From the IMG/VR virus record IMGVR_UViG_3300045999_010033, positions 124,001 to 188,000 of that record: DNA of 64,000 nucleotides. One strand, written 5' to 3'. Positions within the stretch are counted from its first letter, which is position 1. Each line of letters begins with the position of its first letter. Below, one piece after another: positions 12,669 through 31,325 of this stretch. The notes under the pieces are model-generated. The model saw only the letters and a list, made by a program, of their open reading frames with translations. It did no database searches and was not told the DNA's origin. A program made the translations under genes and the position numbers.

Positions 12669-13235
12669 TTATAAACATCCTGTTACGTAAACTACATATA
12701 AATATTGTCCAACATTAGAATCATAAGTATAATCGTATTGATATGTTGCATTTAAGCTGGTTATTCCAACACTAGATGTTACTAATGTAGAAATAGACGC
12801 GGTATATTGACTTCCATCGTTTTTCCACGGTTTACCATAGTATACTTCTAAATCTCCGGCAGTAGCAACACTACCTGATATATTAATATCAATTAAACCA
12901 TTTTCAGTTCCTAAATCAATAATTACCATTGTTTTTGAATAGCAGTAATCCGATATGTGATATAAAGATGCAGTATTTTGAGATAATGTGTAAGCGCTAT
13001 GGTCATAATCGTACCAATAAGACATTGAGTAATTGAGGCTGTTTGGAGAATTAAATTTTCCTTCGGGAAGTGATATTCCTCCTACGTTTATTGGTGCGTA
13101 TATGTTTGTAGCAGATAACGCCCAATTATTAAGTGCCAACAAAGAACCTTGCAACTCATAATTATTAACTAAACTTTGAGATGTTTCGGTTCTCACCATA
13201 CTCATAGAAATAGGACCACTAGACGGTAAAGCCAT
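12669..13235 (-). CDS. putative fibre-tip accessory protein (188 aa)
   Basis: N-terminus MALPSSGPISMSMVRTE resembles small proteins that follow S74-chaperone fibres; overlaps the fibre gene end by 17 nt. Confidence 0.6.
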   Translation of the reverse strand: MALPSSGPISMSMVRTETSQSLVNNYELQGSLLALNNWALSATNIYAPINVGGISLPEGKFNSPNSLNYSMSYWYDYDHSAYTLSQNTASLYHISDYCYSKTMVIIDLGTENGLIDINISGSVATAGDLEVYYGKPWKNDGSQYTASISTLVTSSVGITSLNATYQYDYTYDSNVGQYLYVVYVTGCL

Positions 13236-16200
13236 AATTTCTTAATTTTCTTTTTAAATCATGTATTTGAATCTGCTGCTCCTTAACTGCCTCAATCAAT
13301 AAAGGTATAATCTTTTCGTAACGCACTGAAAGATAACCGGTATCATTCTGTCTTATAGCTTCAGGTAATACCGATTGTATTTCTTGAGCAATCACACCAA
13401 CATCTACGCCATCGTATCCATGTATGGTTTTATATTCCGGCTTCCAATTAAATCGCACACCTGATAATGTATTTACTTTATCTAATGCGTTTTCAATCGG
13501 ACTTATTATATCTTTTAATCTTTCATCCGATGTAGAATATGCTACAATATCGTTACTTGCATCTATTCTACCATCAGTATCACTCGGACTTATATTTCCT
13601 CCAACTGCAAGAGAACCTGCTGTTATTTTAACATCTCCAGTAACAACATTTATTGCATCTCCGTTTGATGTACCAGTCACACTTAATGTGTTTCCATTGA
13701 ATGTCAAATTAGATTCAACTGTAGCGTTTGGTGCACTTCCATTTAATGTTATAACTCCATTATCAGTTGTGCCAGTTAGTGTTAAAGAGCCATTTGCCCC
13801 ACTACTTCCACTACTTCCACTACTACCGCTGCTTCCATTTTGTCCGCTCGTTCCGCTGCTGCCGCGCGTGCCACTAGTACCACTGCTTCCGGCGGTTCCG
13901 CTAGTCCCGCTACTACCTGCTGAACCGCTACTTCCTGCAGTTCCGCTGCTACCACTACTACCTGCAGTTCCGCTGCTTCCTGCAGATCCACTACTGCCAC
14001 TGCTGCCGGTTGAACCGCTACTTCCTGCAGTTCCGCTGCTTCCGCCGGTTCCACTTGTCCCGCTGCTACCGCGCGTACCGCTCGTGCCGCTACTGCCACT
14101 GCTACCCGTTGAACCGCTACTGCCACTACTTCCTGCAGTTCCACTACTACCGGTTGAACCGCTACTTCCGCTACTTCCATTTTGTCCACTGGTCCCGCTG
14201 CTTCCTGCTGTCCCGCTACTTCCGCTGCTACCGCGCGTTCCACTAGTTCCGCTGCTTCCGCTGCTTCCATTTTGTCCGCTGGTCCCGCTGCTTCCTGCAG
14301 TTCCGCTGCTGCCACTACTACCAGTTGAACCACTACTTCCGCTACTTCCGCTGCTTCCATTTTGTCCACTGGTCCCGCTGCTTCCTGCAGTTCCGCTGCT
14401 GCCACTGCTTCCTGCTGTCCCGCTACTTCCGCTGCTTCCGCGCGTTCCACTAGTTCCGCTGCTTCCTGCGGTTCCGCTACTACCACTACTACCGTTTTGT
14501 CCACTGGTCCCACTACTTCCGCTGCTTCCACTACTACCGCTGCTTCCATTTTGTCCGCTCGTTCCACTACTTCCTGCAGTTCCGCTGGTCCCGCTACTTC
14601 CTGCAGTTCCGCTGGTCCCGCTACTTCCTGCAGTTCCGCTGCTGCCGGTTGAACCACTACTTCCACTGCTACCTGCTGTCCCGCTGCTACCACTGCTGCC
14701 GGTTGAACCACTACTTCCGCTGCTGCCACTGCTTCCGGCAGTTCCGCTACTACCACTACTTCCGGCAGTTCCGGATGCACCTCTACGACCCGATATATTT
14801 ATATCCCAATTACTACGATTAGTAGTTACAGTATTAAATGTTATATTTAAAATTAATGTTGTTCCTGAGTAGGAAGTTATATTACCTTCCATGTATTCGT
14901 TAGCATCTAAACCATACGCTACAATTAAAGTTTGTCCATTAGTATATGATAATTCGGCAGATGCTACCGTAAAAGTTTTTGAACCGGTTCCAGTTCCGTG
15001 AGTAGTGGTCGATGTTGTTGCATATCTACCTCCTGAAATTCCTGATGATCCACTACTTCCACTACTTCCACTTGTTCCTGCACTACCGCTGCTTCCACTG
15101 CTTCCGCTACTTCCACTACTTCCTGCAGTTCCGCTCGTTCCGCTACTTCCATTTTGGCCGCTCGTTCCACTACTTCCGCTACTTCCTGCAGATCCACTAC
15201 TGCCGCTGCTACCAGTTGAACCGCTACTACCTGCCGAGCCAGACGTACCACTACTTCCACTACTTCCGGTTGACCCGCTGCTACCGCTCGTTCCACTACT
15301 GCCATTTTGTCCGCTCGTTCCACTGCTTCCGCTACTTCCATTTTGTCCACTCGTTCCACTGGTCCCGCTACTTCCGCTACTTCCGCTGCTTCCACTGCTA
15401 CCTGTCGTTCCGCTGCTTCCTGCGGTTCCGCTGCTTCCACTTATTCCGGCGGTGCCGCTACTTCCACTACTTCCACTGCTTCCATTTTGTCCACTCGTAC
15501 CACTGCTTCCGCTACTTCCACTACTTCCGGTCGTTCCGCTACTTCCTGCAGTTCCGCTACTTCCGCTTATTCCTGCAGTACCGCTGCTTCCGCTGCTTCC
15601 TGCGGTTCCGCTACTTCCGCTGCTTCCATTTTGTCCACTCGTGCCACTACTACCATTTTGTCCGCTGCTTCCGCTGCTTCCACTGGTCCCCGAAGAGCCC
15701 GCAGGACCCGTAGCTCCTCCTAAGTTTACATCCCAACCATCTACGGTGGCGGTACCACTTATAGAATCTACATTTATTGTTAATAAGTTTGCGGCATAGG
15801 TAATGACCGTACCTTCTATTTTGTTTCCCGGATTACCAATGTCTGCTATTAATACCGGTTGTCCGGTTGTATATGAAAGGCCCGGAGTATTAAGGGTAAA
15901 TGAAATATCATCATTTACATTTATTGCCGAAAGTGTAAATTCTGTGTATGATGTTGTTGAGTATTTATCACCACCACTTTGTCCACTAGTACCACTCGAT
16001 CCAGATGATCCTGCTGTCCCACTTTCTCCGCTTGTTCCGCTACTTCCACCCGCACCGCCAATACCCGAAGTTCCATAATAAAGTCTATTATCGGTATCTA
16101 TTACTATTGTTCGGGTAGCACTATTATTTTCAGTTATAGTTGGTAAATAAAACGCACCACTTATAATTATTTCATCGGTATTTGCAATAAATAGGTCACT

Positions 16201-17403
16201 TCTTGCTCCATCATTTGTACCGTCACCTATTATGAAAAGTCCAGTTGTGTTATTTTTTCTATTATATTTTCCTACTACAGTTTGATATGAACCGGATGCA
16301 ATTGTTCCAATGCCTTCTGCGTGAGATGCTTCACCAAGTGCAACCGTGTTTGAACCTTCGGCGTGGGAATATAATCCTCTTGCTTCGGTGTAGTATCCCT
16401 CCGCGTGTGATGCAGTTTGATATGTTTGTGTAGAATATCCTTCCGCATGAGATGCCACTCCGGTTGCGGTAGTTGAACGTCCTTGTGCTACGGAATATAT
16501 CGCAGTTGCATTTGATTGATATCCCATTGCTACTGATGCAGTTCCTGATGCAGTTGTACCTATACCTTGTTCAATTGATGCACTTACTTTTAATTTATTT
16601 TCATTAAATGTTAAGTTTATAGATGCTGTCGCAGCTAATGGATTTGTTCCATCTGCTACCAATACTCTATTAGTGTTTGGTGTATGTATTCCTGTGAAAG
16701 AAACCCCACTACTGCCACTACTACCTGCGGTTCCGCTACTTCCTGCAGTCCCACTGCTACCACTGCTACCCGCGGTTCCGCTACTACCACTGCTTCCGGC
16801 CGAACCACTACTTCCACTACTTCCTGCAGTTCCTGCTACTCCACTACTTCCGCTGCTACCACTTGAGCCGGTATTTCCGCTGGTCCCGCTCGTGCCGCTA
16901 CTTCCGCGCGTTCCGGACGTACCGCTACTTCCACTTGTACTGCTGGTTCCGCTGCTGCCACTACTGCCATCTTTTCCACTACTTCCGCTACTTCCTGCCG
17001 AACCGCTACTTCCACTAACACCACTACTTCCTGCCGAACCGCTACTACCATTTGTCCCACTATTTCCAGATGACCCGCTACTACCGGCCGAACCGCTACT
17101 ACCTGCAGTTCCGGATGTGCCGTTTACTGCAGAAACTGTTGTATATTGTAATAATCCGGTTGTTGTATCTACAACGACGTATGTTGCTATTGAATTGTTA
17201 ATTGTAACTCCGGTTGCATACAACTGAGTTCCTTTCACATTTCCAGTAATTAGAACATTACCGGTTGTTTGTACGTTTAATGGTAATAAAGAAATGGTTG
17301 AACTGCCATCATTTATTTTTAGTACACTACCATCTAAGTAAAATTCACCGTGCGATAGAGATGGTGTTGATCCACCACGTCTAATTTGAAAAATAGATGC
17401 CAT
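13219..17403 (-). CDS. tail fibre (1394 aa) with Gly-Ser/Thr triplet blocks, YadA/Hep_Hag-like head repeats and C-terminal peptidase S74 intramolecular chaperone
   Basis: N-terminal IFQIRRG anchor motif; 14-aa repeats xSHAEGxxT (~16290-16580); YSTSDERLKDIISPIENALDKV...VGVIAQEI...VRYEKIIPLLIEAVKE is S74-type. Confidence 0.85.
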   Translation of the reverse strand: MASIFQIRRGGSTPSLSHGEFYLDGSVLKINDGSSTISLLPLNVQTTGNVLITGNVKGTQLYATGVTINNSIATYVVVDTTTGLLQYTTVSAVNGTSGTAGSSGSAGSSGSSGNSGTNGSSGSAGSSGVSGSSGSAGSSGSSGKDGSSGSSGTSSTSGSSGTSGTRGSSGTSGTSGNTGSSGSSGSSGVAGTAGSSGSSGSAGSSGSSGTAGSSGSSGTAGSSGTAGSSGSSGVSFTGIHTPNTNRVLVADGTNPLAATASINLTFNENKLKVSASIEQGIGTTASGTASVAMGYQSNATAIYSVAQGRSTTATGVASHAEGYSTQTYQTASHAEGYYTEARGLYSHAEGSNTVALGEASHAEGIGTIASGSYQTVVGKYNRKNNTTGLFIIGDGTNDGARSDLFIANTDEIIISGAFYLPTITENNSATRTIVIDTDNRLYYGTSGIGGAGGSSGTSGESGTAGSSGSSGTSGQSGGDKYSTTSYTEFTLSAINVNDDISFTLNTPGLSYTTGQPVLIADIGNPGNKIEGTVITYAANLLTINVDSISGTATVDGWDVNLGGATGPAGSSGTSGSSGSSGQNGSSGTSGQNGSSGSSGTAGSSGSSGTAGISGSSGTAGSSGTTGSSGSSGSSGTSGQNGSSGSSGSSGTAGISGSSGTAGSSGTTGSSGSSGSSGSSGTSGTSGQNGSSGSSGTSGQNGSSGTSGSSGSTGSSGSSGTSGSAGSSGSTGSSGSSGSAGSSGSSGTSGQNGSSGTSGTAGSSGSSGSSGSSGSAGTSGSSGSSGSSGISGGRYATTSTTTHGTGTGSKTFTVASAELSYTNGQTLIVAYGLDANEYMEGNITSYSGTTLILNITFNTVTTNRSNWDINISGRRGASGTAGSSGSSGTAGSSGSSGSSGSTGSSGSSGTAGSSGSSGSTGSSGTAGSSGTSGTAGSSGTSGTAGSSGTSGQNGSSGSSGSSGSSGTSGQNGSSGSSGTAGSSGTSGTRGSSGSSGTAGSSGSSGTAGSSGTSGQNGSSGSSGSSGSTGSSGSSGTAGSSGTSGQNGSSGSSGTSGTRGSSGSSGTAGSSGTSGQNGSSGSSGSTGSSGTAGSSGSSGSTGSSGSSGTSGTRGSSGTSGTGGSSGTAGSSGSTGSSGSSGSAGSSGTAGSSGSSGTAGSSGSAGSSGTSGTAGSSGTSGTRGSSGTSGQNGSSGSSGSSGSSGANGSLTLTGTTDNGVITLNGSAPNATVESNLTFNGNTLSVTGTSNGDAINVVTGDVKITAGSLAVGGNISPSDTDGRIDASNDIVAYSTSDERLKDIISPIENALDKVNTLSGVRFNWKPEYKTIHGYDGVDVGVIAQEIQSVLPEAIRQNDTGYLSVRYEKIIPLLIEAVKEQQIQIHDLKRKLRNYGFTV
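13790..14790 (-). repeat. (Gly-X-Y)n block, X/Y = Ser/Thr/Ala, with GQN and GTR units
   Basis: GC-rich imperfect 9-nt tandem repeats; translation GTAGSSGSSGSTGSS...; boundaries approximate. Confidence 0.95.
15030..15718 (-). repeat. (Gly-X-Y)n Ser/Thr block
   Basis: Imperfect 9-nt tandem repeats, GSSGTSGQNGSS units; boundaries approximate. Confidence 0.95.
16705..17121 (-). repeat. (Gly-X-Y)n Ser/Thr block
   Basis: GTSGTAGSSGSAGSS...GSSGVS; 9-nt periodicity. Confidence 0.95.
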
Positions 17404-17459: not shown

Positions 17460-19550
17460 TCAAATGTGCGATTTAAGAGAATCAATCACAATTTTTGCTG
17501 TAATTGATTTAGTGCATTCAAATTGTCGGTCAGTTCCTTTATGAATAGGACACCAATTCCAATCTCCCGCATCTAATCGGTGTGTGTTGAAACAATTTGA
17601 ACACTTATCTTGCGGTGCGGTTATTCTTATTGTGTTTGATTTAGTTTCTGTATAGTCTGCACTAAATCCTGATATTATACACATTCTGGTCCCCACTGCC
17701 CAACTTAACCAACTAAGTCCGCTACTTATTCCTATGAATAATTTTGATTTTTGCAATATTTCTATTACGTTATCAAATGAACTTTCTTCTAATTTTTCTA
17801 TACCGGGCGGATGCCAATTGCCCATGTATCCATTACCTTCTTTTGATAGTAAAACTACACGATATCCTGCCGATTTAAGGTAATCTACAACTTCTTGCCA
17901 ACCCGTTGGATTATTCCAATATTTGGCTTGAGCAGTTGAATGTATTGCTATTGAAACTATATTTTCTTTTTCTATATTTGGTTTTAATTTTATATTTGGT
18001 TTAATTTCTTTAAAATCGAGGCCAAGTATATCAGATGCAGTTTTTTGCAATTCTTGTGGTTTAAAATCTAATGGATTTTTATTATAATCAACATTTCCCT
18101 CTGCATTATAGTACCAACCAATTGTGTACATTGCATACAAATCGTTTACAACATCACCAGGATTTACAAATTCTATCTCAGGGTAGTTTTCCTTAAACAG
18201 ATTATTATGAAAAGTTGAACATATTACATTACAATCGTGCTTCTTTCTAAATTCATCTACATATGGAAACCATGCTAACGTATCTCCTATGGATTTAGAA
18301 TCTAACGCAATATAAACACGCTTACCTTTTAGTGATATTTCATATTTGTATCTCGTTTCACCATCATCTGCTATTACCATCCAATCTACATAATGAGATT
18401 TATTTGTTTTAATCCAACAATTACGGCCTATGATGCCTGAATGTTCTATTCTTCCAGTTTTTTTATCAATAAATTGTACGTTATATCTTTTATCCGGTCC
18501 ACCTTTTATTTCAAAAAACGCACTTTGTATAAAATTAATATTAAAAGATGGTCTTTCTTTTAAAGATGGTTTTGGATTTATTTTTGTAAGATTATAATTT
18601 TTTATTAAAATTTCTCGCATAGAATCTGAATTAATATAATATTTTATTAATTTTTTTGTTATGTTTTTCCAAGATAGTTCATTTGCCTGCGATAACGCAT
18701 CCGATTTATACTCTACGTATGTAAAATTATGCATTAAATATTCAATTGCTTGCACAATTAAATCTACATCACGTTCAACATACACCATACCCTTTATTGA
18801 GTTATCGGATTCAAATGTACCAATTACGGGTAATCCGCATGCCATTGCTTCCAATAGTGTAAGGTTTGGATGCCCTGCTTCTAATACCGATGGATGTAAG
18901 AATATAGTATGTTGCTTATATAAATCTCTCAACTCTTCTTCCGAAACGTCATATAATATTGTTAATTTATCATAATCACTTGGGTACTTTTGGAAATAAT
19001 TTTTGTTGTTTGATGGCCCTGCAATGGTTATTGGTAATCCCATTCGTTTTGCCGCTTCTATTGCAAATCCAAACCCTTTACGGTCTTCGGTTTGGTCAAA
19101 AGCAAACCCATTGTTGGCTACACAAAGTAATCGGTGTTCCGTTGTTTCACCCGGAGTAAACCAATCAGTATTAACACCATGTGAAAGGTATTCAGGTATT
19201 CCATCAAAGTATTCAATAAGGTATTTTGCAGGAACAAATGCACGTTTGGCATTACGAATAGCTTTTAGATTTTCCTTATACAATTCCGAATCCTTACCAT
19301 ATAAAAATGTATGGTGGTCATGTAATGTAAAGTAGTATGGGATACCACGTTCATACGCCATATTGGCCAAGTTTGCTACATGGATATGAACGATATCTTC
19401 ACTACCATCTATATCATCTAAATATTTTATTTGGGAATCGTATCCTAAATCCAATAGGTTATTATGAATTTCCCAAATTATTTTTTCAACAGCTCCCCAT
19501 CCATTTGGAGGTATTGGCAGTAACCCCGGAGTGACATTAACTATTTTCAT
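17460..19550 (-). CDS. bifunctional glycosyltransferase: N-terminal GT4 (GT-B) domain plus C-terminal Aah/TibC-like (autotransporter O-heptosyltransferase family) domain
   Basis: GT4: IPPNGWGAVEKII, EAGHPNLTLLEAMACGLP. C-terminal: KRVYIALDSKSIGDTLAWFPYV, FIGISSGLSWLSWA and the 4-Cys motif CSNCFN...WNWCPIHKGTDRQFECTKSIT. Confidence 0.8.
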   Translation of the reverse strand: MKIVNVTPGLLPIPPNGWGAVEKIIWEIHNNLLDLGYDSQIKYLDDIDGSEDIVHIHVANLANMAYERGIPYYFTLHDHHTFLYGKDSELYKENLKAIRNAKRAFVPAKYLIEYFDGIPEYLSHGVNTDWFTPGETTEHRLLCVANNGFAFDQTEDRKGFGFAIEAAKRMGLPITIAGPSNNKNYFQKYPSDYDKLTILYDVSEEELRDLYKQHTIFLHPSVLEAGHPNLTLLEAMACGLPVIGTFESDNSIKGMVYVERDVDLIVQAIEYLMHNFTYVEYKSDALSQANELSWKNITKKLIKYYINSDSMREILIKNYNLTKINPKPSLKERPSFNINFIQSAFFEIKGGPDKRYNVQFIDKKTGRIEHSGIIGRNCWIKTNKSHYVDWMVIADDGETRYKYEISLKGKRVYIALDSKSIGDTLAWFPYVDEFRKKHDCNVICSTFHNNLFKENYPEIEFVNPGDVVNDLYAMYTIGWYYNAEGNVDYNKNPLDFKPQELQKTASDILGLDFKEIKPNIKLKPNIEKENIVSIAIHSTAQAKYWNNPTGWQEVVDYLKSAGYRVVLLSKEGNGYMGNWHPPGIEKLEESSFDNVIEILQKSKLFIGISSGLSWLSWAVGTRMCIISGFSADYTETKSNTIRITAPQDKCSNCFNTHRLDAGDWNWCPIHKGTDRQFECTKSITAKIVIDSLKSHI

Positions 19551-20349
19551 TTATATAATTTAATATCTTTTCGTTTTCTAACTTATCTTTTGTACCATGA
19601 TAAAAATATACACGACTGGAATCTTCACATTGTTCGTACATATTTTCATCTATAAAACTTTTTTTAATATTATAGTTTTTTTCACACAATTTAAATGTAG
19701 TAAATTTATGCGTATTTACAAAAATTCTATCATATTTTTCATTTAAATTATTTTTCCATAATAAAACATTTGCAGCGGTTTCATCTCTAAATGGAAAATA
19801 TGATGTGTGATTTTTTAAAAGATATTTATTTTCACAAATAGATTTCCATTCTTCTAAAAAATCAATTGAGTGTTTATCAAACGTAAAAAAACAAGCCATA
19901 ACATAAAACATAGATCTGTCTACTACTCCAAAGTATTTCATTAATTTTGTTTCATCAAATAAAATTGTTTCAGTATCACTTTTCCAAAAAGTAAATGGAT
20001 ATTCTATAACTCCCTCCGAAAAGCAAGGATATCCTAAATTTGATTTTATTTGAAATTGATTAAATCTTTTAGAAAGTATTATATCAGAGTCAAAATAACA
20101 AAAATCACCGTCAGTTCTATTCAACGCATCTAAAGAAATGGATGGTTTATAAAAATCAAATTTAGGTAAATAATTAATTTTTGGCCAAGGTATTTTTATT
20201 AAATTTTTGTGCTGTAAATTCGAATTGTATCCAATTGTATAATAGAATATATTATCCGGCTCAAAATTCGCGTATTGAAACGATTTTAAAAGATTTGAGA
20301 CCTGATATTCATAATTTATATCCGATAATACTACTATATTCATTTCCAA
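19537..20349 (-). CDS. GT-A fold glycosyltransferase (DxD type)
   Basis: 270 aa; FYKP, CYFDSD (DxD), FRDETAANVLLW and FYHG motifs; overlaps both neighbours (translational coupling). Confidence 0.7.
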   Translation of the reverse strand: MEMNIVVLSDINYEYQVSNLLKSFQYANFEPDNIFYYTIGYNSNLQHKNLIKIPWPKINYLPKFDFYKPSISLDALNRTDGDFCYFDSDIILSKRFNQFQIKSNLGYPCFSEGVIEYPFTFWKSDTETILFDETKLMKYFGVVDRSMFYVMACFFTFDKHSIDFLEEWKSICENKYLLKNHTSYFPFRDETAANVLLWKNNLNEKYDRIFVNTHKFTTFKLCEKNYNIKKSFIDENMYEQCEDSSRVYFYHGTKDKLENEKILNYINENS

Positions 20350-23300
20350 AAATTATATATTCTAAGTGTTCCATCTCCTAAAAAAAGTTGAAATGTAGAA
20401 AACCCAGTCGATGTCATTCTATCCATTATATATTTTGAATCATCTTCATTTAATATATTTCCATGAAATTCCAAAGAAACTTTTTTAACTTTAGATAAAT
20501 TTTCATCCGATATTCCTTCTAATACTTTTCTTTCATAGCCTTCTACATCGATTTTTAGAAAATCAATTTTTTCAAAAACATTATTTTCAAATAATGAATC
20601 TAATGTAGTAACTGGTACAAATTCGGATATTTGTCCTTCATTTGCAAAAGTTCCACACATTGTATCATCCGTTGAGTTTAAAAATATATTTTCAAATCCA
20701 TTTTTATTTGAAACACCCATTTTAAATATTTCACTATTTATAGGCTTGTTTCTTATTAGGCATTCAAACGCAATTTTACTCGGTTCAAAACTATATATTT
20801 TAGAAGCACCCTTGTAATACGCTGAGTTTGAAAATACCCCAACATTTGCCCCCAAATCAACAACAATATCACCATCTTCTATTTTACAATCAAATCTTTC
20901 ATATATACATCCATTTGTATATTCATCATAAGTAAAATGCATTTCTTTAAACATATGGTTACTTCCATCCATAAGTCCTATCCACATTTTATCCCATGTA
21001 AAATCTTCACTAAAATTATACAAATCGTAAAGCTTTATTTGTTGGTTTTTATTTAACCAATAATTTTTTTTTATTTTTGATGCATAAATAAATTTAGTAT
21101 TTTTTACTGTAGATTGTTCAACCTTAAATCCTAATTCTTTTAATTTTTTAATCATATTTTCTACTTTACCCATACCATTTTCAAAGTAAAAATCATGATA
21201 TTCAATTAAAAAGCTATCTATTTTTTCTACAATTTCTTTTGAAAGAGTATCTATTATACCAAATTCTGCTCCTTCTACATCAATTTTTATTAAATCTATT
21301 TTTTCTTCGTTAGAATTTTTTATAGCTTCTTCTAATGTAATAGCACTTACATCATACGATGGAGAGTGACCGGATTCTGCTATAAGAGATGAAATCAAAG
21401 AGTTTTCTTCATTTATGTAAAATTTTAGTGATGCGTTTTCCTTGTAAATTGCTTTATCAATTATTGTTATATTTTTATCATTTTTTAATGATTTTTCTAA
21501 ATGAAGTAACGCTTTTTTATTTGGCTCAAAGCAATATACCTTTTTTGCATTTCTAGATAAAATGTATTTTGTCCAAAGTCCAACGTTTGCACCAATATCA
21601 AATACAACTTTACAATTATCTAAATCATATGAATCATATATTCCATCTATAAAAAATTCTTCATAATTTAGAAAAATAGGTTCAGTATTTGATATATTTA
21701 ATTCTGGTTTTTTTATGGGGATATCTTTTAATTTCAATTCCTTAAACTCCAATAGTTGTTCATTTTCATTGTAGTATTCTATTAAAAATCCTGAAAAATT
21801 TGGATGATTTTTAAAATCAATTACATGCTTTGGCAGTGGGATAGTCCAAAACCAAGCTCCAGAATTAGCAGGAGGTAAAGACATTGAGTATATGCATGCT
21901 TTCGAATCTACATCTTTAATACATAATTTTAAATGTTTATCTATGTTTTCTAAATATACTATATTGAATTTGTTTTCATTTTCATCAAATTTTAAATCTA
22001 TTGGTAATTTCATTTTTTCTTTGTTATCCCGATTATTAAATTTTATTTGTCCTGCGTTTGAATACAATTGGATATCATTAGAATTGTATTCAATTACTTT
22101 TGTTTCAAGTAAACTTTTATTTACAAATGTTTTAATTTTTATAGTGCAACTATCGTTTAATTTTACAATTTTATATTTTTTATTATTTTGATATAAAAAT
22201 GAATCAACTTTTTTATCTGAAAGTTGAATTTCAAAATCATATTCAATTAAATCATTTGTTGTAATTATAAGGTATGCAGTTTTTTCTTCATCTAAAAGTA
22301 TTTCATACTTAATACTCTGATATGATGATATATTTATTTGGCTATCAAAAAAATAATCTTTAACATAGTTTTTTATTAAAAGTACTTTATTTTGATTAAA
22401 ACACTTATAAAAAAAATACTCTAAACAATTAGGAAATTGTGAAGCAAAATTTTGATTATAAATTTCCAAATCAATCGGAAAATATGAATTAAATTGATTT
22501 AAAAATGATTCCGTCTTTCCAATAAAAAAGCTTGTTTCATAATATTGGCCAACGATATCGCCAAATACTGCTTTTGGTGGATAAAAGAAAACAAACTCTT
22601 TTTCTTCTTTAATCATTTCATTTTCTAATAATTGTATTTGTTCTATTCCTTTTTTCGAATATTTGTGATCAAACTCACAAAAATAGAAATGGTCATATCC
22701 TAAACTTTTAGCAGAATTTAATGCTAATCGCATAGAACGTATGATTGGAAATTCATGCGAATAATTTAAATTTTGTAAAATACTAAAATCTTCATTTATA
22801 TCATACGCGTAATTATGGCTAACGTTAAATCTATTATCCGAATCATATAAATGATAATCTACCGATGAAACTATATCTCCTGGCAATGTGCAATGTGATA
22901 CAATCATAATTGGGCATCGCATTGGTTTTATAGATTTTATACAATCTCTAAGAAGATTTAATTTAACATCAGTAGTTGCATATGTATCTATTATAAAAAT
23001 TTTATTTTTACTATTTGTTTCTATATTTTCATTTTTTTTTAATCCCAATATTTCTACAATCTTTTCCGAATTAACATCGGAATCGATATTGTTCAAATAC
23101 TGAATATTTTCATACTTATCAAAATATCCCAAATAAACATCTAAATTGTAAATTAAACTAGGTATGTTCCAACCAATTGCTTCTCTAATAACAAGTGGCA
23201 TGGTTTCTTTATCAGTAGAATGACCACGAGATGTAAACAAAAATAAATCTGCCATTTCATAAAACGTATCTACATCACTACGTTCTCCCCACCATTTACA

Positions 23301-24002
23301 ATTTGATGGAAAATCCCGCATAATCGGCTCCCAATAGTGCCTAAAATTATCCGCTTGGTTACCTATAAAGTGAAATTGAATTGGATATCCTTTTAACTTT
23401 CTTGCATATTCAATAACTTCTGCTTGATTTTTTCTTGGTGTAAAAAGACCCACATTTATAACGTGCCTAACATTCGGGTCTAAACCTAATCCGATTAGTA
23501 TTTCTTCCCTACTACGTGTTTTTGTTTTAGATTCAATTGGATATTCTACCAATTCAGTTGGAATACCCAATACTTTAAATTTATTTACCTGATAATCTGA
23601 AACCATTAAGAATCTATCAGGAAAATGCAATTTACCATTAATATCAAATCCGGAATCGTGAGATGTTTCTATAATTTTATACTTCCTATCTTCTTTATAA
23701 ATTCTGAGAGCAAGTTCGTATGGAATAAAATATTCGGGTAATTCTTGAAAATGAATTATATCGGGGTTTATACCAACTATTTCATTTAGTATCCAATTTT
23801 TATCTTCACCCAATGTAATCAATCGTTTTCCAAGTATAGATTCGATACGATTTCGTTGAACTACTAATTTTCCACCGGTATGATTATCCCATTCAATACA
23901 ATATATCTCATAATCATTTATGAGAGATTCTATTTGTTTATAAAGATATTGAGGTTGCCCACCGGTTGATAAATGTGGCGTTATAAAAAGTAACTTTTGC
24001 AT
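20340..24002 (-). CDS. multidomain protein: GT4 glycosyltransferase + putative GT-A-like domain + two FkbM-family SAM methyltransferases
   Basis: 1220 aa; FITPHLSTGGQPQYL, NVGLFTPRKNQ, ETMPLVIREA (EX7E); FkbM1 VFDIGANVG...EPN...IKIDVEGAE; FkbM2 VVDLGANVG...FEPS...LKIDVEGYE. Confidence 0.85.
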   Translation of the reverse strand: MQKLLFITPHLSTGGQPQYLYKQIESLINDYEIYCIEWDNHTGGKLVVQRNRIESILGKRLITLGEDKNWILNEIVGINPDIIHFQELPEYFIPYELALRIYKEDRKYKIIETSHDSGFDINGKLHFPDRFLMVSDYQVNKFKVLGIPTELVEYPIESKTKTRSREEILIGLGLDPNVRHVINVGLFTPRKNQAEVIEYARKLKGYPIQFHFIGNQADNFRHYWEPIMRDFPSNCKWWGERSDVDTFYEMADLFLFTSRGHSTDKETMPLVIREAIGWNIPSLIYNLDVYLGYFDKYENIQYLNNIDSDVNSEKIVEILGLKKNENIETNSKNKIFIIDTYATTDVKLNLLRDCIKSIKPMRCPIMIVSHCTLPGDIVSSVDYHLYDSDNRFNVSHNYAYDINEDFSILQNLNYSHEFPIIRSMRLALNSAKSLGYDHFYFCEFDHKYSKKGIEQIQLLENEMIKEEKEFVFFYPPKAVFGDIVGQYYETSFFIGKTESFLNQFNSYFPIDLEIYNQNFASQFPNCLEYFFYKCFNQNKVLLIKNYVKDYFFDSQINISSYQSIKYEILLDEEKTAYLIITTNDLIEYDFEIQLSDKKVDSFLYQNNKKYKIVKLNDSCTIKIKTFVNKSLLETKVIEYNSNDIQLYSNAGQIKFNNRDNKEKMKLPIDLKFDENENKFNIVYLENIDKHLKLCIKDVDSKACIYSMSLPPANSGAWFWTIPLPKHVIDFKNHPNFSGFLIEYYNENEQLLEFKELKLKDIPIKKPELNISNTEPIFLNYEEFFIDGIYDSYDLDNCKVVFDIGANVGLWTKYILSRNAKKVYCFEPNKKALLHLEKSLKNDKNITIIDKAIYKENASLKFYINEENSLISSLIAESGHSPSYDVSAITLEEAIKNSNEEKIDLIKIDVEGAEFGIIDTLSKEIVEKIDSFLIEYHDFYFENGMGKVENMIKKLKELGFKVEQSTVKNTKFIYASKIKKNYWLNKNQQIKLYDLYNFSEDFTWDKMWIGLMDGSNHMFKEMHFTYDEYTNGCIYERFDCKIEDGDIVVDLGANVGVFSNSAYYKGASKIYSFEPSKIAFECLIRNKPINSEIFKMGVSNKNGFENIFLNSTDDTMCGTFANEGQISEFVPVTTLDSLFENNVFEKIDFLKIDVEGYERKVLEGISDENLSKVKKVSLEFHGNILNEDDSKYIMDRMTSTGFSTFQLFLGDGTLRIYNFWK

Positions 24003-25539: not shown

Positions 25540-28218
25540 TTAATAATTGTAGAACATATATAGTTTTGCTCCTGCAGGTATAGGTTCTGCACCTATTATA
25601 CTACCAGTTATTGTCAGGCTCCCACTTATATCTAATTGGGAATTAAGTGCAGTTTCTTTTCCAATTCCAACACGAGATTGTGATACAAATAATGCACGTG
25701 TTCCGTATTGTCCGATTCGGACCGTATTATCGGAAAACGCTTCCATTATAGGAAGACCTGCTATTGTATTAACACTAAATAGAGATCCGGTAAAGCTATC
25801 ACTAACACTAAATAGTCTTCCCGAAACACCATCAACCGTCAATACATTAGAACCACTGCCTATAAATGCCGATGCGGTAGATGAGGCCGACACTATTAGA
25901 CTACCGGTTATAATCGCTCTACCAACATATGGAAATGTAGCCCCAGCACCACCCGGCGCCCAAGAGGCAGATACTGCAAATGATGCAGTACCGAACAATG
26001 AACCGGTTATGCTTCCACTTACACTTAAACTACCAGTTACGGTGTGTACGTCGGAAACTACATTACCTATTCTAACCCCGGTGTTAAGTACTTGGAGTTC
26101 AATTGAACTACCGGTAATAACAGTGAGTGAACCGGTGATGATTGTATTGCCGTTCACATCGAGTTTTGCGTTGGGAGATGTTGTTCCTATACCTAAGTTA
26201 CCTGTACTAGAAAAGATATAGTTAGCATTATTACTATTACCTGCTAGGAAATATAAAGGTATGCTAGTACCTATCGAACTTATATAGTTACTGGTTGGCC
26301 CGCCACCTCCTGCTAATAAAAGGCCGTAGCCAGAATCTGTTATTTTAATTGTTCTATTTCCTGCTGTGCTGACGCTTCCTATCTGCAAATTACTATCGGG
26401 TGATGTAGTTCCTATACCTACGTTTCCTTCTATAATCATACCGGATGTTGGTGGAGCAGTATCACCATAAACGGATCCCACTGAAACACTTGCCACCGAT
26501 AATCCGGTATATCCGTTGCCTGAGTTAAGCATTCCAAATCTGGAAAATCCGGTGGTACTATATTGTACTCTATTTTGTCCAGTATCTCCTCCGATAGAAA
26601 ACGCATTAGTACCTGTAAACCTGCCGATTCCTGCTACTTCTAGTTTTTGATTAGGAGTCGTTGTACCAATACCAACGTTTCCGCTTCCACTTATGAAAAA
26701 GTATTCAGCTCCAGCAGAACTTTGAACTCTCATTAAATTATCGGAAGCTACACTACCACTAATATGCAAAGAAGCAGTAGGAAATCTAGTACCAATGCCT
26801 ACTCTGGCAGACCCCACGGTTCCTCCTACTGAATCTATTGTTAATACCGCATCGGTAACTGCGGTAGCAGATGTGTTAGAATTATTATTTAATAAAATGT
26901 GTATCTTTCCACTAGCATTCGCTCCTTGTCCATGTCCATCCGTTCTTTCAAAAACAAGTGCAGATTTTCTATAATTGGAATTTGCAGGCTCAACGTACCC
27001 AAAAGATATTCCTGCTATTTGAGTGTTTGCTATTTGAGATCCAAAACTAGAGACTACCCCCGCAGCTCCTCCATTTACATCTAATTTATATTGAGGAGTT
27101 GTAGTGCTTATACCGACGTTTCCATTTGTTCTTAATATAGTCATTCTATCGGTCAAAGTCCCATCTCCTGTAGAAAAAACTAACCCCGAAATAGCAGAAG
27201 ACTCAGCAGTAATTGCTGCTTGTTTTACCGTGCCCCCAGTGCTCAATATAATATGAGGAGTTGCTGTTGTTGGATTTGTTGTATACGCAATCTCTAGCTT
27301 TGCCCCAGGACTTGTTGTACCGATACCAACATTACTACTTGAACTTATGAATATATTAGTCGCACCCGATGCACCTTGATCCTGAATAGATCCAGTTGCA
27401 ATTGTCGTTGTACTATTGAATTTAGAAACAAAGTTAGTTACACCTGTCGTAGATACCGATGTTCCACTACTGCCACTGCTGCCACTACTGCCGGTTGAAC
27501 CACTACTTCCACTACTTCCTGCTGTCCCGCTACTTCCTGCAGTTCCGCTGCTGCCGGTTGAACCGCTACTTCCGCTACTTCCTGCAGTTCCGCTGGTCCC
27601 GCTACTACCACGCGTGCCACTAGTTCCGCTACTTCCGCTGCTGCCGGTCGAACCACTGCTTCCGCTGCTTCCTGCAGTTCCACTGCTGCCGGTTGACCCG
27701 CTACTTCCACTACTTCCTGCAGTCCCGCTGCTGCCGCTACTGCCGGTTGAACCACTGCTTCCGCTGCTTCCTGCAGTTCCACTGCTGCCGGTTGACCCGC
27801 TACTTCCACTACTTCCTGCAGTTCCGCTACTGCCGCTACTGCCGGTTGAACCACTACTTCCGCTGCTACCTGCAGTTCCACTAGTACCGGATGTTGCGGC
27901 AGTATACGATGTTCCATTTATTATTAGTGAACCTGATATATTAACAGATCCGGTAAATTGGTGTGTATTGGATACTATTGTTCCAAACTTTGTAGAACCA
28001 CTTACATATTCAGTTGATGAACTTATTATTTGTGTTACGATAGTTTGCGCTGTGAGTGTTCCACGAACCGTAAAATTGTCCGCAGAAGATGCGGTTAACG
28101 CAACAGATGCAGTTCCTAAGAGAGAACCAGTAATACCCGCACTTACATTAAGAGAGCCGGTTATTTGTGAGCTATTAAGAGCTATTACACCATTTCTGGC
28201 TATAAATTCATTTGGCAT
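25540..28218 (-). CDS. tail fibre (892 aa) with a Gly-Ser/Thr block and repeated GNVGIGTTxP shaft motifs
   Basis: MPNEFIARNG start; several (N/R)(V/L)GI(G/S)T(T/R) repeats; C-terminal LFSV.D...GSLFSVN.I.GLPI.E.FSD module shared with the 2301-aa fibre. Confidence 0.8.
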   Translation of the reverse strand: MPNEFIARNGVIALNSSQITGSLNVSAGITGSLLGTASVALTASSADNFTVRGTLTAQTIVTQIISSSTEYVSGSTKFGTIVSNTHQFTGSVNISGSLIINGTSYTAATSGTSGTAGSSGSSGSTGSSGSSGTAGSSGSSGSTGSSGTAGSSGSSGSTGSSGSSGTAGSSGSSGSTGSSGTAGSSGSSGSTGSSGSSGTSGTRGSSGTSGTAGSSGSSGSTGSSGTAGSSGTAGSSGSSGSTGSSGSSGSSGTSVSTTGVTNFVSKFNSTTTIATGSIQDQGASGATNIFISSSSNVGIGTTSPGAKLEIAYTTNPTTATPHIILSTGGTVKQAAITAESSAISGLVFSTGDGTLTDRMTILRTNGNVGISTTTPQYKLDVNGGAAGVVSSFGSQIANTQIAGISFGYVEPANSNYRKSALVFERTDGHGQGANASGKIHILLNNNSNTSATAVTDAVLTIDSVGGTVGSARVGIGTRFPTASLHISGSVASDNLMRVQSSAGAEYFFISGSGNVGIGTTTPNQKLEVAGIGRFTGTNAFSIGGDTGQNRVQYSTTGFSRFGMLNSGNGYTGLSVASVSVGSVYGDTAPPTSGMIIEGNVGIGTTSPDSNLQIGSVSTAGNRTIKITDSGYGLLLAGGGGPTSNYISSIGTSIPLYFLAGNSNNANYIFSSTGNLGIGTTSPNAKLDVNGNTIITGSLTVITGSSIELQVLNTGVRIGNVVSDVHTVTGSLSVSGSITGSLFGTASFAVSASWAPGGAGATFPYVGRAIITGSLIVSASSTASAFIGSGSNVLTVDGVSGRLFSVSDSFTGSLFSVNTIAGLPIMEAFSDNTVRIGQYGTRALFVSQSRVGIGKETALNSQLDISGSLTITGSIIGAEPIPAGAKLYMFYNY
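27460..27890 (-). repeat. (Gly-X-Y)n Ser/Thr block
   Basis: GTAGSSGSSGSTGSS units; 9-nt periodicity; boundaries approximate. Confidence 0.95.
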
Positions 28219-29176: not shown

Positions 29177-29186
29177 TTTTTATTTT

Positions 29187-30571: not shown

Positions 30572-30602
30572 TTTTTGATAACTCCTTTTAATTTGTTATA
30601 GA

Positions 30603-30610
30603 TATAAATA
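30603..30610 (-). promoter_or_regulatory. TATTTATA putative late promoter (within the LamG array)
   Basis: Exact motif in a 42-nt gap. Confidence 0.55.
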
Positions 30611-30613
30611 TTT

Positions 30614-31324: not shown

Positions 31325-31325
31325 A

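What the first reader, a model, noticed from the sequence alone, without database searches (positions are those of the whole stretch)
17460..18330. Aah/TibC-like protein heptosyltransferase domain with an intact four-cysteine iron-finger motif in a phage
Seen: SIGDTLAWFPY, FIGISSGLSWLSW and CxxC...CP...C (CSNCFN...WCPIHKGTDRQFEC, ~17510-17605), fused behind a GT4 domain. Established: the bacterial autotransporter heptosyltransferases TibC and Aah use ADP-heptose, modify Ser, and need a Cys4-bound ferric iron. Inference: this could be the priming protein-O-glycosyltransferase. If the host is a Bacteroidota member, whose LPS often lacks heptose, the donor may be a different sugar.
Basis: partly seen in the sequence, partly recalled or inferred. 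Interest (0 to 1): 0.72.

Follow-up and report, generated by a model that had tools for sequence, protein, structure and literature searches.

The report
Phage TibC-like glycosyltransferase beside serine-rich collagen fibres
A 221-kb lake-water phage encodes a two-domain sugar-adding enzyme whose second half is a clear relative of the iron-containing TibC/Aah protein heptosyltransferases. It sits next to proline-free, serine-rich collagen-like tail-fibre genes, which comparative genomics points to as its likely targets.

Summary
ORF 17460-19550 (-), 696 aa, is a GT4 domain fused to a TibC/Aah-family domain (aa 352-693). That domain scores 286 bits on TIGR04414 (cut-off 200), and the best fold match is TibC (TM 0.84 by target).

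Conserved with TibC: all four iron-binding Cys, the catalytic Asp, both beta-phosphate residues and the heptose-contacting Trp. Not conserved: the adenine-contacting Arg-286, which is Val here and non-Arg in nearly all close relatives.

The gene lies in the structural module of a complete myovirus genome. It overlaps two further glycan genes and ends 56 nt upstream of a 1394-aa collagen-like fibre gene (245 G-x-y triplets, 127 of them GSS, one Pro).

The new point is the likely acceptor:
- 21 of 34 dereplicated viral loci have such fibres within 10 kb.
- 12 of 44 contigs with G-[ST]-[ST] repeats carry the domain, against 0 of 46 contigs with other collagens.
- In bacterial contigs, 19 of 26 close homologues have a G-[ST]-[ST]-repeat ORF, mostly within about 350 bp. 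Among classical autotransporter-type loci the count is 0 of 18.

Donor, iron binding, oligomer state and activity are untested. I rate it a new variant of a known kind.

The parts
17460..19550 (-). Whole gene: 696-aa bifunctional glycosyltransferase (GT4 domain + TibC/Aah-like domain), intact ORF
18621..19550 (-). N-terminal GT4-type (retaining GT-B) domain, about aa 1-310
   Evidence: Pfam Glyco_trans_1_4/Glycos_transf_1. Fold matches MshA, BshA, PimA and the methylmannose mannosyltransferase 7qsg.
17472..18497 (-). TIGR04414 (Aah/TibC) match, aa 352-693. The predicted beta-barrel is aa 335-404 and the GT-B catalytic core starts at aa 411.
18282..18284 (-). Asp-423, equivalent of the TibC catalytic base Asp-110 (in SIGDTLAWFPY)
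   Evidence: Alignment (the 4rb4 chain is the D110A mutant; 4rap has D); paper. D in 119 of 120 homologues.
17514..17603 (-). Iron-finger motif: Cys-650, 653, 667, 679, equivalent to TibC Cys-339, 342, 358, 370
   Evidence: Each Cys is conserved in 118 of 120 homologues.
17766..17768 (-). Val-595 at the position of TibC Arg-286 (adenine N1 contact): the one donor-site residue not conserved
19537..20349 (-). 270-aa ORF overlapping the GT gene start by 14 nt. Virus-only family with a probable GT-A-like fold. The same module is found fused to GT9/TibC-like, methyltransferase and GT1 domains in other phages.
   Evidence: No Pfam or NCBIfam hit; atlas features and structure
20340..24002 (-). 1220-aa multidomain protein: GT1-type domain (aa about 167-331) plus two FkbM-family methyltransferase domains. 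Overlaps the 270-aa ORF by 10 nt.
13219..17403 (-). 1394-aa collagen-like tail fibre starting 56 nt downstream of the GT gene. It has 245 G-x-y triplets in five runs (GSS 127, GTS 33, GTA 28), 314 Ser and 1 Pro in the runs, and a C-terminal Peptidase_S74 intramolecular chaperone. Proposed acceptor.
25540..28218 (-). 892-aa collagen-like tail fibre (48 triplets, GSS 28, no Pro). Possible further acceptor.
33020..39925 (-). 2301-aa collagen-like fibre (175 triplets in four runs, GSS 107, no Pro). Possible further acceptor.

Best explanation
The gene encodes a cytoplasmic, late-expressed, two-headed protein glycosyltransferase that decorates the phage's own collagen-like fibres. The C-terminal TibC/Aah-like domain has a beta-barrel, a GT-B core with catalytic Asp-423, and a Cys4 metal finger. 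I propose that it primes by transferring a nucleotide-activated sugar, most likely an NDP-heptose, onto Ser (possibly Thr) hydroxyls of the proline-free (G-S/T-S/T)n stalks of the three fibres. The fused GT4 domain, the overlapping 270-aa GT-A-like protein and the 1220-aa GT1 plus 2x FkbM protein would then extend and O-methylate the glycan. Shown here: family membership by sequence and fold, conservation of the catalytic, phosphate, heptose and Cys4 residues, gene order, and the statistical and syntenic coupling to G-[ST]-[ST] repeat proteins. Inferred: enzymatic activity, acceptor, donor, order of action, iron binding, ring assembly, and any role of the sugars in stabilising or shielding the fibre.
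For: Family and fold:
- TIGR04414 scores 286 bits against a cut-off of 200; TibC PDB chains give E 2e-55; Foldseek's top 21 hits are all TibC chains, TM 0.81-0.84 by target.
- The equivalents of Asp-110, Thr-226, Lys-230, Trp-305, Phe-368 and Cys-339/342/358/370 are present and near-invariant in 120 homologues.

Context:
- The three glycan genes overlap by 14 and 10 nt, and the fibre gene starts 56 nt downstream.
- All three collagen-like genes of the 221-kb genome lie within about 22 kb of the GT gene.

Coupling to G-[ST]-[ST] repeat proteins:
- 44 of 80 viral loci, or 21 of 34 clusters at 85% identity, have a Ser/Thr-rich, Pro-poor collagen-like ORF within 10 kb; in 13 clusters it is within 2 kb.
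- Another 11 of 35 contigs have collagen elsewhere on the contig.
- In the reverse test, 12 of 44 contigs chosen only for a (G[ST][ST])x8 DNA pattern carry the domain, against 0 of 46 contigs with other collagen repeats. Fisher p = 8e-5; 2.4 versus 2.1 Mb searched.
- Outside phages, 19 of 26 bacterial or MAG contigs holding close homologues have a G-[ST]-[ST]-repeat ORF, mostly within about 350 bp. Among classical BAHT loci the count is 0 of 18.
- In a 2.67-Mb Methylococcales contig and in the Methylobacter luteus isolate, the neighbour is a signal-peptide protein with (GTS)n or GTA/GTS repeats, flanked by housekeeping genes, so it is not a prophage.
- The cultured Microcystis phage Mel-JY01 has a collagen-like frame of at least 1016 aa (GTS 77, GSS 57) 1.7 kb upstream of its GT4-FkbM-TibC-like gene.

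Donor:
- The phage encodes a kinase closest to heptose-7-P kinase (139 bits; the next family scores 42) and a nucleotidyltransferase closest to heptose-1-P adenylyltransferase (94 bits).
- One jumbo-phage lineage with the domain has GmhA-like, HldA-like and HldC-like genes.
- The Methylococcales genomes carrying the cassette have a bona fide HldE.
Against: - There is no biochemical evidence for activity, acceptor, donor or metal.
- Arg-286, whose mutation abolished or largely diminished TibC activity, is Val here. It is non-Arg in 119 of 120 close homologues and in 112 of 150 wider representatives, so nucleotide recognition differs or has moved.
- The HldA-like and HldC-like proteins score below their family cut-offs (345 and 181.5 bits), and GmhA and GmhB are absent from the phage.
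- 13 of 34 viral clusters, mostly the stand-alone proteins of about 386 aa, show no Ser/Thr collagen within 10 kb. A 133-kb contig rated 70% complete has none at all.
- The co-occurrence counts are not corrected for phylogeny.
- TibC recognises a folded beta-helix strand-loop-strand motif (my recollection of Lu et al. 2014; the TIGR04414 family name says 'strand-loop-strand'), which a collagen helix is not.
- The homodimer prediction gave no answer.
Confidence: 0.55

Rival explanations
1. Same enzyme family and virion target, but the acceptor is not the collagen triple-helix repeat. It would be beta-structured segments (strand-loop-strand, as in autotransporters), for example the repetitive '...SHAEG...' segment at aa 280-370 of the 1394-aa fibre, or other structural proteins such as the capsid, sheath or ConA-like proteins.
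For: Classical BAHTs read a beta-helix motif (TIGR04414 family name). The 1394-aa fibre has a short-period repeat between collagen runs that resembles trimeric-autotransporter head repeats; this is my reading of the sequence, with no Pfam hit. 13 of 34 viral clusters lack a nearby Ser/Thr collagen.
Against: What bacterial cassettes, a cyanophage and the jumbo phages share is the G-[ST]-[ST] repeat itself. The bacterial partners are small proteins: signal peptide, repeat, then a short C-terminal domain, with no such beta-repeat.
Confidence: 0.2
2. Acceptor as proposed, but the donor is not ADP-heptose. It would be another NDP-sugar: GDP-heptose, or a product of the phage's large deoxy/branched-sugar gene cluster.
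For: The adenine-reading Arg-286 is replaced by Val. There is no phage GmhA or GmhB. Outside the window the phage carries RmlC-like, RfbH/DegT-like, TPP-dependent, B12-radical-SAM and SDR sugar-modifying genes next to the kinase. A Bacteroidota host is hinted at.
Against: The heptose-O4 Trp and the beta-phosphate Thr/Lys are invariant. Position 300 is Ser as in AAH, which accepts both ADP-heptose epimers. The phage kinase and nucleotidyltransferase are each closest to the heptose enzymes. Bacteria with the same Arg-less subtype make ADP-heptose.
Confidence: 0.3
3. The enzyme acts on the host rather than the virion, modifying host LPS, surface proteins or autotransporters to block superinfection or remodel the envelope.
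For: Phage glycosyltransferases that alter host surface antigens are well known (general knowledge; mentioned in PMC12619734). Pfam also reports a weak GT9 match (27.6 bits).
Against: The gene sits inside the late structural module between fibre genes and overlaps its neighbours. LPS heptosyltransferase models score far below their cut-offs. The fold is TibC with the iron finger. The coupling to repeat-protein genes is tight in many genomes.
Confidence: 0.07
4. The TibC-like domain is catalytically silent and serves as a fibre assembly or scaffolding factor. Only the GT4 domain would be an enzyme.
For: Loss of Arg-286, whose alanine mutant abolished or largely diminished TibC activity. The iron finger in TibC is a structural and substrate-gripping element.
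Against: The catalytic Asp, Thr-226, Lys-230 and Trp-305 equivalents are essentially invariant across hundreds of diverged sequences, as expected under selection for catalysis.
Confidence: 0.05

Closest known systems
TibC (ETEC) and Aah (DAEC): bacterial autotransporter heptosyltransferases (BAHT family, TIGR04414; PDB 4RAP/4RB4; PMC4358343)
   Same: Same fold: beta-barrel, GT-B core, beta-hairpin thumb and Cys4 iron finger. The same catalytic Asp, beta-phosphate Thr/Lys, heptose-contacting Trp and Phe-368. A cytoplasmic enzyme encoded next to its presumed hyper-modified, Ser-rich repetitive substrate gene.
   Different: About 31% identity. Fused behind a GT4 domain. Encoded by a phage. No autotransporter nearby; the neighbour is a collagen-like fibre. 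The adenine-contact Arg-286 is Val. The thumb is 3 residues shorter, with Tyr-Met instead of Phe-Val at the tip. It falls in a separate clade from the E. coli, Citrobacter, Burkholderia and Selenomonadaceae BAHTs (SH-aLRT 100).
Chromosomal two-gene cassettes in Methylococcales and Polaromonas genomes and MAGs: stand-alone TibC-like GT plus a secreted (GTS)n protein. I found no description of them.
   Same: Same subfamily: 48-55% identity, a non-Arg residue at position 286, Cys4 intact. The same kind of neighbour, a G-[ST]-[ST] repeat protein.
   Different: Stand-alone proteins of about 370-440 aa without the GT4 fusion. The partner is a small signal-peptide protein, not a phage fibre. The flanking genes are housekeeping genes.
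BclA-type collagen-like glycoproteins of Bacillus and C. difficile spores, with their glycosyltransferases (e.g. SgtA on BclA3; PMC7157674)
   Same: A bacterial-world collagen-like (G-x-y)n filament protein that is heavily O-glycosylated on hydroxy amino acids within the repeat by a dedicated enzyme encoded nearby. This is the closest functional analogy.
   Different: An unrelated glycosyltransferase family. The repeats are GPT-type (with Pro, and Thr as acceptor). The setting is a spore surface, not a virion. This comparison rests on the abstract seen and on my own knowledge.
Virion glycosylation in mycobacteriophages (Freeman et al. 2023, cited in PMC12619734)
   Same: Phage-encoded glycosyltransferases that modify the phage's own structural proteins.
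   Different: The targets there are the C-termini of capsid and tail-tube subunits. The enzymes are not BAHT-like and no collagen-like acceptor is involved.
LPS core heptosyltransferases WaaC/WaaF/WaaQ (GT9)
   Same: A distant GT-B/GT9 superfamily relationship (Pfam PF01075, 27.6 bits).
   Different: Family models score 17-18 bits against cut-offs of 185-467. Per the TibC paper, the iron finger and thumb are modules unique to TibC. The acceptor is a lipid-linked sugar, not a protein.

Membership tests
BAHT (TibC/Aah; TIGR04414) | Sequence profile score above the curated equivalog cut-off | tested here: met
   286.2 bits against a cut-off of 200, aa 352-693 covering profile positions 25-372 of 374; 288 bits on the genome
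BAHT (TibC/Aah; TIGR04414) | Protomer fold: N-terminal beta-barrel, GT-B catalytic domain, beta-hairpin thumb, C-terminal finger module | tested here: met
   AF2 model pLDDT 86, strands at aa 335-404 followed by a Rossmann-like core. Foldseek's top 21 hits are TibC chains, E down to 5e-28, TM 0.81-0.84 by target over about 385 columns.
BAHT (TibC/Aah; TIGR04414) | Four conserved Cys that coordinate ferric iron (TibC C339, C342, C358, C370) | tested here: met
   C650, C653, C667 and C679 align exactly. Each is conserved in 118 of 120 homologues and 142-144 of 150 representatives.
BAHT (TibC/Aah; TIGR04414) | Iron is actually bound (coloured protein, 1Fe-0S centre) | not testable with these tools
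   Needs ICP-MS or UV-vis on purified protein. Sequence cannot tell Fe from Zn.
BAHT (TibC/Aah; TIGR04414) | Catalytic base Asp-110 | tested here: met
   Asp-423 in SIGDTLAWFPY; D in 119 of 120 and 148 of 150
BAHT (TibC/Aah; TIGR04414) | Donor contacts Thr-226 and Lys-230 (beta-phosphate) and Trp-305 (heptose O4) | tested here: met
   Thr-539, Lys-543 and Trp-614. Essentially invariant: T 120/120, K 119/120, W 120/120; W 150/150.
BAHT (TibC/Aah; TIGR04414) | Arg-286 hydrogen-bonding adenine N1 (the stated basis of ADP specificity) | tested here: not met
   Val-595. V/T/I/A/L in 119 of 120 close homologues, while E. coli and C. rodentium BAHTs have R. All close bacterial homologues covering that column have I/V/L/T, and all 26 classical ones have R. 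Among 150 wider representatives, 38 have R and 112 do not.
BAHT (TibC/Aah; TIGR04414) | Residue 300 sets heptose C6 stereoselectivity (Pro in TibC, Ser in AAH) | tested here: inconclusive
   Ser-609, the AAH state, which tolerates both ADP-D,D- and ADP-L,D-heptose. This is informative only if the donor is a heptose.
BAHT (TibC/Aah; TIGR04414) | Dodecameric ring built from iron-finger back-to-back dimers and hydrophobic thumb tips (Phe-265/Val-266, Phe-368) | tested here: inconclusive
   The thumb tip is Tyr-575/Met-576 (hydrophobic; Y 105/120, M 117/120) and Phe-677 is kept, but the thumb is 3 residues shorter. 33 of 150 representatives lack the tip. The homodimer prediction returned 'no answer'.
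BAHT (TibC/Aah; TIGR04414) | Encoded next to its autotransporter substrate (AIDA-I/TibA-type passenger repeats) | tested here: not met
   There is no autotransporter in the window; the neighbour is a collagen-like fibre. The C. rodentium control locus does show an adjacent AIDA-repeat protein. 0 of 18 classical loci, against 19 of 26 close-homologue loci, have G-[ST]-[ST] repeat ORFs.
BAHT (TibC/Aah; TIGR04414) | Transfers heptose from ADP-heptose to Ser of a protein | not testable with these tools
   Indirect evidence only: HldA-like (139 bits, cut-off 345) and HldC-like (94 bits, cut-off 181.5) genes in the phage; no GmhA or GmhB.
LPS heptosyltransferases (GT9: WaaC, WaaF, WaaQ) | Family profile above cut-off | tested here: not met
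   TIGR02193 18.2 bits (cut-off 185.3); RfaQ 17.1 bits (cut-off 467). Only the broad Pfam PF01075 passes (27.6 bits against 22).
GT4 retaining glycosyltransferases (N-terminal domain) | Pfam group-1 glycosyltransferase profile and GT-B fold | tested here: met
   PF13692 47.2 bits (cut-off 27) and PF00534 38.3 bits (cut-off 26.4). Fold hits to MshA, BshA, PimA and 7qsg at E 1e-12 to 1e-10.
Collagen-like phage tail fibre with intramolecular chaperone (the proposed acceptor, 13219-17403) | Collagen triple-helix repeats plus a C-terminal Peptidase_S74 chaperone domain | tested here: met
   PF01391 318 bits; PF13884 54.9 bits at aa 1292-1350. Composition is unusual: 245 triplets, 314 Ser, 82 Thr, 1 Pro, 10 charged residues.

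The most novel reading that the evidence does not exclude
A large, mostly viral branch of the TibC/Aah family is a previously unrecognised class of collagen O-glycosyltransferases. These enzymes would hyper-glycosylate proline-free (Gly-Ser/Thr-Ser/Thr)n stalks of phage fibres, and of small secreted proteins in Methylococcales and Polaromonas. The sugar coat, rather than proline or hydroxyproline, would then give the triple helix its stability and protease or antibody shielding. Because part of the branch has lost the adenine-reading Arg, some members may use a nucleotide-sugar other than ADP-heptose.
Probability: 0.35. Interest if true: 0.8.

Novelty: new variant of a known kind. Interest (0 to 1): 0.64.

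Why it matters
BAHTs are known only as virulence-associated enzymes that heptosylate autotransporter adhesins of enteric and Burkholderia pathogens.

Here the same iron-finger enzyme design turns up in abundant lake phages. The gene is found in lake and freshwater metagenomes from 15 studies. The domain occurs in at least 346 viral contig stretches. The family has 1,459 clusters at 50% identity, and at least 150 of them are closer to this protein than TibC is.

It is wired to a different kind of substrate. If confirmed, this would:
- extend protein heptosylation, or a related O-glycosylation, to viruses;
- explain how proline-free Ser-rich 'collagens' can exist;
- identify a glycan layer on phage receptor-binding fibres that could affect host range and stability.

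Two culturable systems, Microcystis phage Mel-JY01 and Methylobacter luteus IMV-B-3098, make this directly testable.

Tried and rejected
- LPS-type heptosyltransferase reading: rejected. Family models score 17-18 bits and the fold is TibC.
- Arg-286 loss as a clean marker of the whole phage-like clade: rejected. It holds for 119 of 120 close homologues and for all close bacterial homologues covering that column, but 38 of 150 wider representatives keep Arg.
- Complete phage-encoded ADP-heptose pathway: not found. GmhA and GmhB are absent.
- Homodimer prediction of aa 330-696: 'no answer', so it is not used as evidence.
- Sigma-70 promoter and terminator scan of 12.5-28.6 kb: uninformative in this AT-rich DNA. 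Promoter-like sites barely exceed the shuffles, and no minus-strand terminator was found.
- Megablast of 20 kb of the window against GenBank phages: no match.
- tRNA scan of the window: none.
- PHROGs gave nothing for several large ORFs.
- Literature searches for phage plus TibC/heptosyltransferase, and for collagen-like plus heptosyltransferase, found nothing relevant.
- The 'moraphage' paper mentions only generic glycosyltransferases.
- Long + strand and out-of-frame ORFs over 13.4-17.2 kb were dismissed as shadows of the GSS-repeat gene.
- I did not run an enzyme-peptide complex prediction, because a low score would not have been informative.
Full report
**1. The observation**

ORF 17460-19550 on the minus strand is intact and encodes 696 aa.
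- SIGDTLAWFPY at aa 420-430.
- FIGISSGLSWLSW at aa 605-617.
- Four cysteines at aa 650, 653, 667 and 679 (nt 17514-17603).

NCBIfam TIGR04414 ('autotransporter strand-loop-strand O-heptosyltransferase', Aah/TibC) matches aa 352-693 with 286.2 bits against a curated cut-off of 200, E 3.6e-85 (288 bits). phmmer against PDB sequences finds only TibC (4RB4/4RAP) for this half, at E 2e-55. The N-terminal 310 aa are a GT4-type domain (Pfam PF13692, 47 bits).

The stated coordinates (17460-18330) cover only the last 290 residues. The TibC-like unit starts about 170-220 nt further upstream.

**2. It is a phage**

The window is positions 124001-188000 of a 221,095-bp virus record rated 100% complete, with 35% G+C. 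The window holds tail sheath, major head, portal and large terminase genes, all on the minus strand. The gene itself is found in lake-water and freshwater metagenomes from 15 different studies.

**3. Residue-level comparison with TibC**

The TibC structure paper (PMC4358343) defines the following:
- the iron ligands Cys-339/342/358/370;
- the catalytic base Asp-110;
- the beta-phosphate contacts Thr-226 and Lys-230;
- the adenine contact Arg-286;
- the heptose-O4 contact Trp-305;
- the stereoselectivity residue Pro-300 (Ser in AAH);
- the thumb tip Phe-265/Val-266, and Phe-368.

From the HMMER alignment, the equivalents here are Cys-650/653/667/679, Asp-423, Thr-539, Lys-543, Val-595, Trp-614, Ser-609, Tyr-575/Met-576 and Phe-677. 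Everything is conserved except the Arg.

In 120 metagenomic homologues the same picture holds. At that position 119 of 120 have Val, Thr, Ile, Ala or Leu and one has Arg, whereas the E. coli and C. rodentium enzymes have Arg.

**4. Fold**

An AlphaFold2 model built on 41 sequences (mean pLDDT 86) shows a beta-barrel at aa 335-404 followed by the GT-B core. Foldseek against the PDB returns TibC chains as the top 21 hits (E down to 5e-28; TM 0.81-0.84 normalised by TibC; about 385 aligned columns). After these come GT4 enzymes (MshA, BshA, PimA, the mannosyltransferase 7qsg) for the N-terminal half. LPS heptosyltransferase profiles score 17-18 bits.

**5. Neighbourhood**

Transcription runs from high to low coordinates. 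The gene order is:
- a 1220-aa protein with a GT1 domain and two FkbM methyltransferase domains (20340-24002);
- a 270-aa virus-only protein (19537-20349) overlapping it by 10 nt, probably GT-A-like, whose fold recurs fused to GT9/TibC-like, methyltransferase and GT1 domains in other phages;
- the GT4-TibC gene, overlapping by 14 nt;
- 56 nt later, a 1394-aa fibre gene (13219-17403) with Pfam Collagen (318 bits) and a C-terminal Peptidase_S74 chaperone.

The fibre has 245 G-x-y triplets: GSS 127, GTS 33 and GTA 28. Its collagen runs contain 314 Ser, 82 Thr, one Pro and ten charged residues.

Two more fibres of the same kind lie at 25540-28218 (48 triplets) and 33020-39925 (175 triplets). These three are the only collagen-like genes in the genome.

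**6. Is the link to Ser/Thr collagen more than local coincidence?**

(a) Viral neighbourhoods. Of 80 viral loci holding relatives of the domain (of 346 confirmed stretches, only the best 80 are kept), 44 have a Ser/Thr-rich (50-96% of X/Y positions), Pro-poor collagen-like ORF within 10 kb. After clustering the domains at 85% identity this is 21 of 34 clusters, 13 of them within 2 kb. Eleven of the remaining 35 contigs have collagen further away. The only complete one has five such ORFs.

(b) Reverse test. A DNA pattern for eight consecutive G-[ST]-[ST] codon triplets pulled an arbitrary sample of viral contigs, and 12 of the 44 searchable ones carry a TIGR04414 match. A generic collagen pattern gave mostly Pro/Gln/Thr/Ala/Asp/Lys-type collagens, and 0 of 46 of those contigs carry the domain. 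Fisher p = 8e-5, with similar amounts of DNA searched (about 2.4 versus 2.1 Mb).

(c) Bacterial genomes. A tree splits the family with SH-aLRT 100. One side is a classical clade: the E. coli Aah-like enzyme, the C. rodentium enzyme next to an AIDA-repeat protein, Burkholderia and Selenomonadaceae. The other side is a clade holding the viral sequences plus chromosomal genes of Methylococcales, Polaromonas and others.
- In the second clade, 19 of 26 loci have a G-[ST]-[ST]-repeat ORF, mostly within about 350 bp of the GT gene. In the classical clade the count is 0 of 18.
- In a 2.67-Mb Methylococcales contig the partner is a 293-aa signal-peptide protein with about 39 GTS triplets, flanked by housekeeping-type genes (I read the flanks as lgt, thyA, ppa and lpxC from the translations, without a tool check).
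- In the isolate Methylobacter luteus IMV-B-3098 a 287-aa signal-peptide protein with GTA/GTS repeats lies directly upstream. These loci are not prophages.

(d) A cultured phage. Microcystis phage Mel-JY01 carries a 1226-aa GT4-FkbM-TibC-like protein (TIGR04414, 317 bits). It also has, 1.7 kb upstream, an open frame of at least 1016 aa with 199 triplets (GTS 77, GSS 57). GenBank annotates this region as minus-strand hypothetical proteins.

These counts are not phylogenetically corrected. Still, the same pairing recurs in three very different settings: jumbo myoviruses, a cyanophage, and proteobacterial chromosomes. That argues for a functional enzyme-substrate pair, analogous to Aah/AIDA-I and TibC/TibA.

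**7. Donor**

The conserved Trp (heptose O4), Thr/Lys (beta-phosphate) and the AAH-like Ser at position 300 fit a heptose donor. Outside the window the phage has a PfkB kinase closest to heptose-7-phosphate kinase (139 bits; the next family scores 42; cut-off 345). It also has a small nucleotidyltransferase closest to heptose-1-phosphate adenylyltransferase (94 bits; glycerol-3-P cytidylyltransferase scores 69; cut-off 181.5). Both sit in a large sugar-modification cluster.

GmhA and GmhB are absent. Among 26 long viral contigs with the domain, six have HldE-like parts. One 343-373-kb lineage has GmhA-like (188 bits), HldA-like (218 bits) and HldC-like genes. The Methylococcales genomes with the cassette have a bona fide HldE.

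Against a simple ADP-heptose reading stands the loss of Arg-286. In the wider family (150 representatives at 50% identity, all closer to the query than TibC is), 38 keep Arg and 112 do not. So this residue varies within the phage-like branch. I rate an NDP-heptose as the most likely donor, at about even odds, with the nucleotide uncertain.

**8. Scale and architecture**

The exhaustive search finds 1,459 clusters at 50% identity (738 at E <= 1e-30). More than 6,479 sequences at 90% clustering passed E <= 1e-3.

The GT4-TibC fusion of about 692-699 aa is the commonest form among the closest relatives. Other forms are stand-alone proteins of about 382 aa, and fusions to FkbM, GT-A-like and other modules of up to 2,033 aa. 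JGI's pipeline already labels many of these as O-heptosyltransferases, so the homology is visible to annotation pipelines. I found no paper that discusses phage members or the collagen link.

**9. Mechanism proposed**

Shown: family, fold, intact catalytic and metal-site residues, operon-like arrangement, and the coupling to G-[ST]-[ST] proteins.

Inferred: during late infection the TibC-like domain primes Ser (and possibly Thr) of the fibre stalks in the cytoplasm. The GT4 domain and the two upstream proteins then extend and methylate the glycan. A dense sugar coat on up to about 300 Ser per chain may stabilise or protect a collagen helix that lacks proline. The closest analogy is glycosylated BclA-type collagen-like spore proteins (plus my own knowledge).

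Iron binding and ring assembly could not be tested. The dimer prediction gave no answer.

**10. Host**

There are only hints:
- lake water as the source;
- 35% G+C;
- a phage-encoded CarboxypepD_reg plus outer-membrane beta-barrel protein;
- close relatives binned into Bacteroidota MAGs.

I do not assign a host.

**11. Verdict**

What is new is the likely acceptor, Ser/Thr-rich collagen-like proteins, and the recognition of a large phage-centred branch that mostly lacks the adenine-reading Arg. I rate it a new variant of a known kind, testable in two culturable systems.

Noticed in passing
window 28490-33018 (-) and 24340-25098 (-): Seven paralogous ORFs of about 220-250 aa, six of them in tandem. 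All have a Laminin_G_3/ConA-like lectin domain and lie between the collagen-like fibre genes. They may be interchangeable fibre-tip or receptor-binding modules.
   Followed up: partly
window 13424-17227 (+ strand and other frames): Several long ORFs (for example 13424-14872 +, 482 aa, 'PLLPLLP...') are antisense or out-of-frame shadows of the GSS-repeat gene, not genes. The same effect seems to have misled the GenBank annotation of Mel-JY01.
   Followed up: partly
L088 (GenBank PP395634.1, Microcystis phage Mel-JY01) nt 2-3050 (+): An open frame of at least 1016 aa with 199 G-x-y triplets (GTS 77, GSS 57) runs to the record start. It is annotated instead as two minus-strand hypothetical proteins plus a short + strand one. 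It lies 1.7 kb upstream of the 1226-aa GT4-FkbM-TibC-like gene.
   Followed up: yes
L084 (G000 76001-95000), outside the window: A large sugar-nucleotide and glycan gene cluster. It holds an HldA-like kinase, an HldC-like nucleotidyltransferase, RmlC-like, RfbH/DegT-like, a split PDH-E1-like TPP enzyme, a B12-radical-SAM enzyme, an SDR, an MTA/SAH-type nucleosidase next to adenine phosphoribosyltransferase, GT2, GT4s, a GT10-like protein and methyltransferases.
   Followed up: partly
L394 2474-5749 (-) (G000 72474-75749), outside the window: A phage-encoded 1091-aa protein with a signal-peptide-like N-terminus, a CarboxypepD_reg domain and an outer-membrane beta-barrel (TonB-dependent-receptor-like). 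This is unusual cargo and a weak hint of a Bacteroidota-type host.
   Followed up: partly
L370 7869-9936 and L351 6869-9071 (Methylococcales chromosomes): Two-gene cassettes of a stand-alone TibC-like glycosyltransferase and a signal-peptide (GTS)n or GTA/GTS-repeat protein, set among housekeeping genes. The same arrangement recurs in Polaromonas and Burkholderiales MAGs.
   Followed up: yes
window 13219-17403 (-), aa about 280-370 of the fibre: Between collagen runs there is a short-period repeat ('...SHAEG...' about every 14 residues) that looks like trimeric-autotransporter head repeats. No Pfam model matched it.
   Followed up: no
window 20340-24002 (-): The 1220-aa protein has an unassigned region of about 440 aa (aa about 340-780) between its GT1 domain and the two FkbM methyltransferase domains. 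It may hold a further transferase module.
   Followed up: no
window 4951-8271 (-), 740-3124 (-), 59600-63895 (-): Large ORFs of 1106, 794 and 1431 aa. The first two had no PHROG match; the third was not examined.
   Followed up: no
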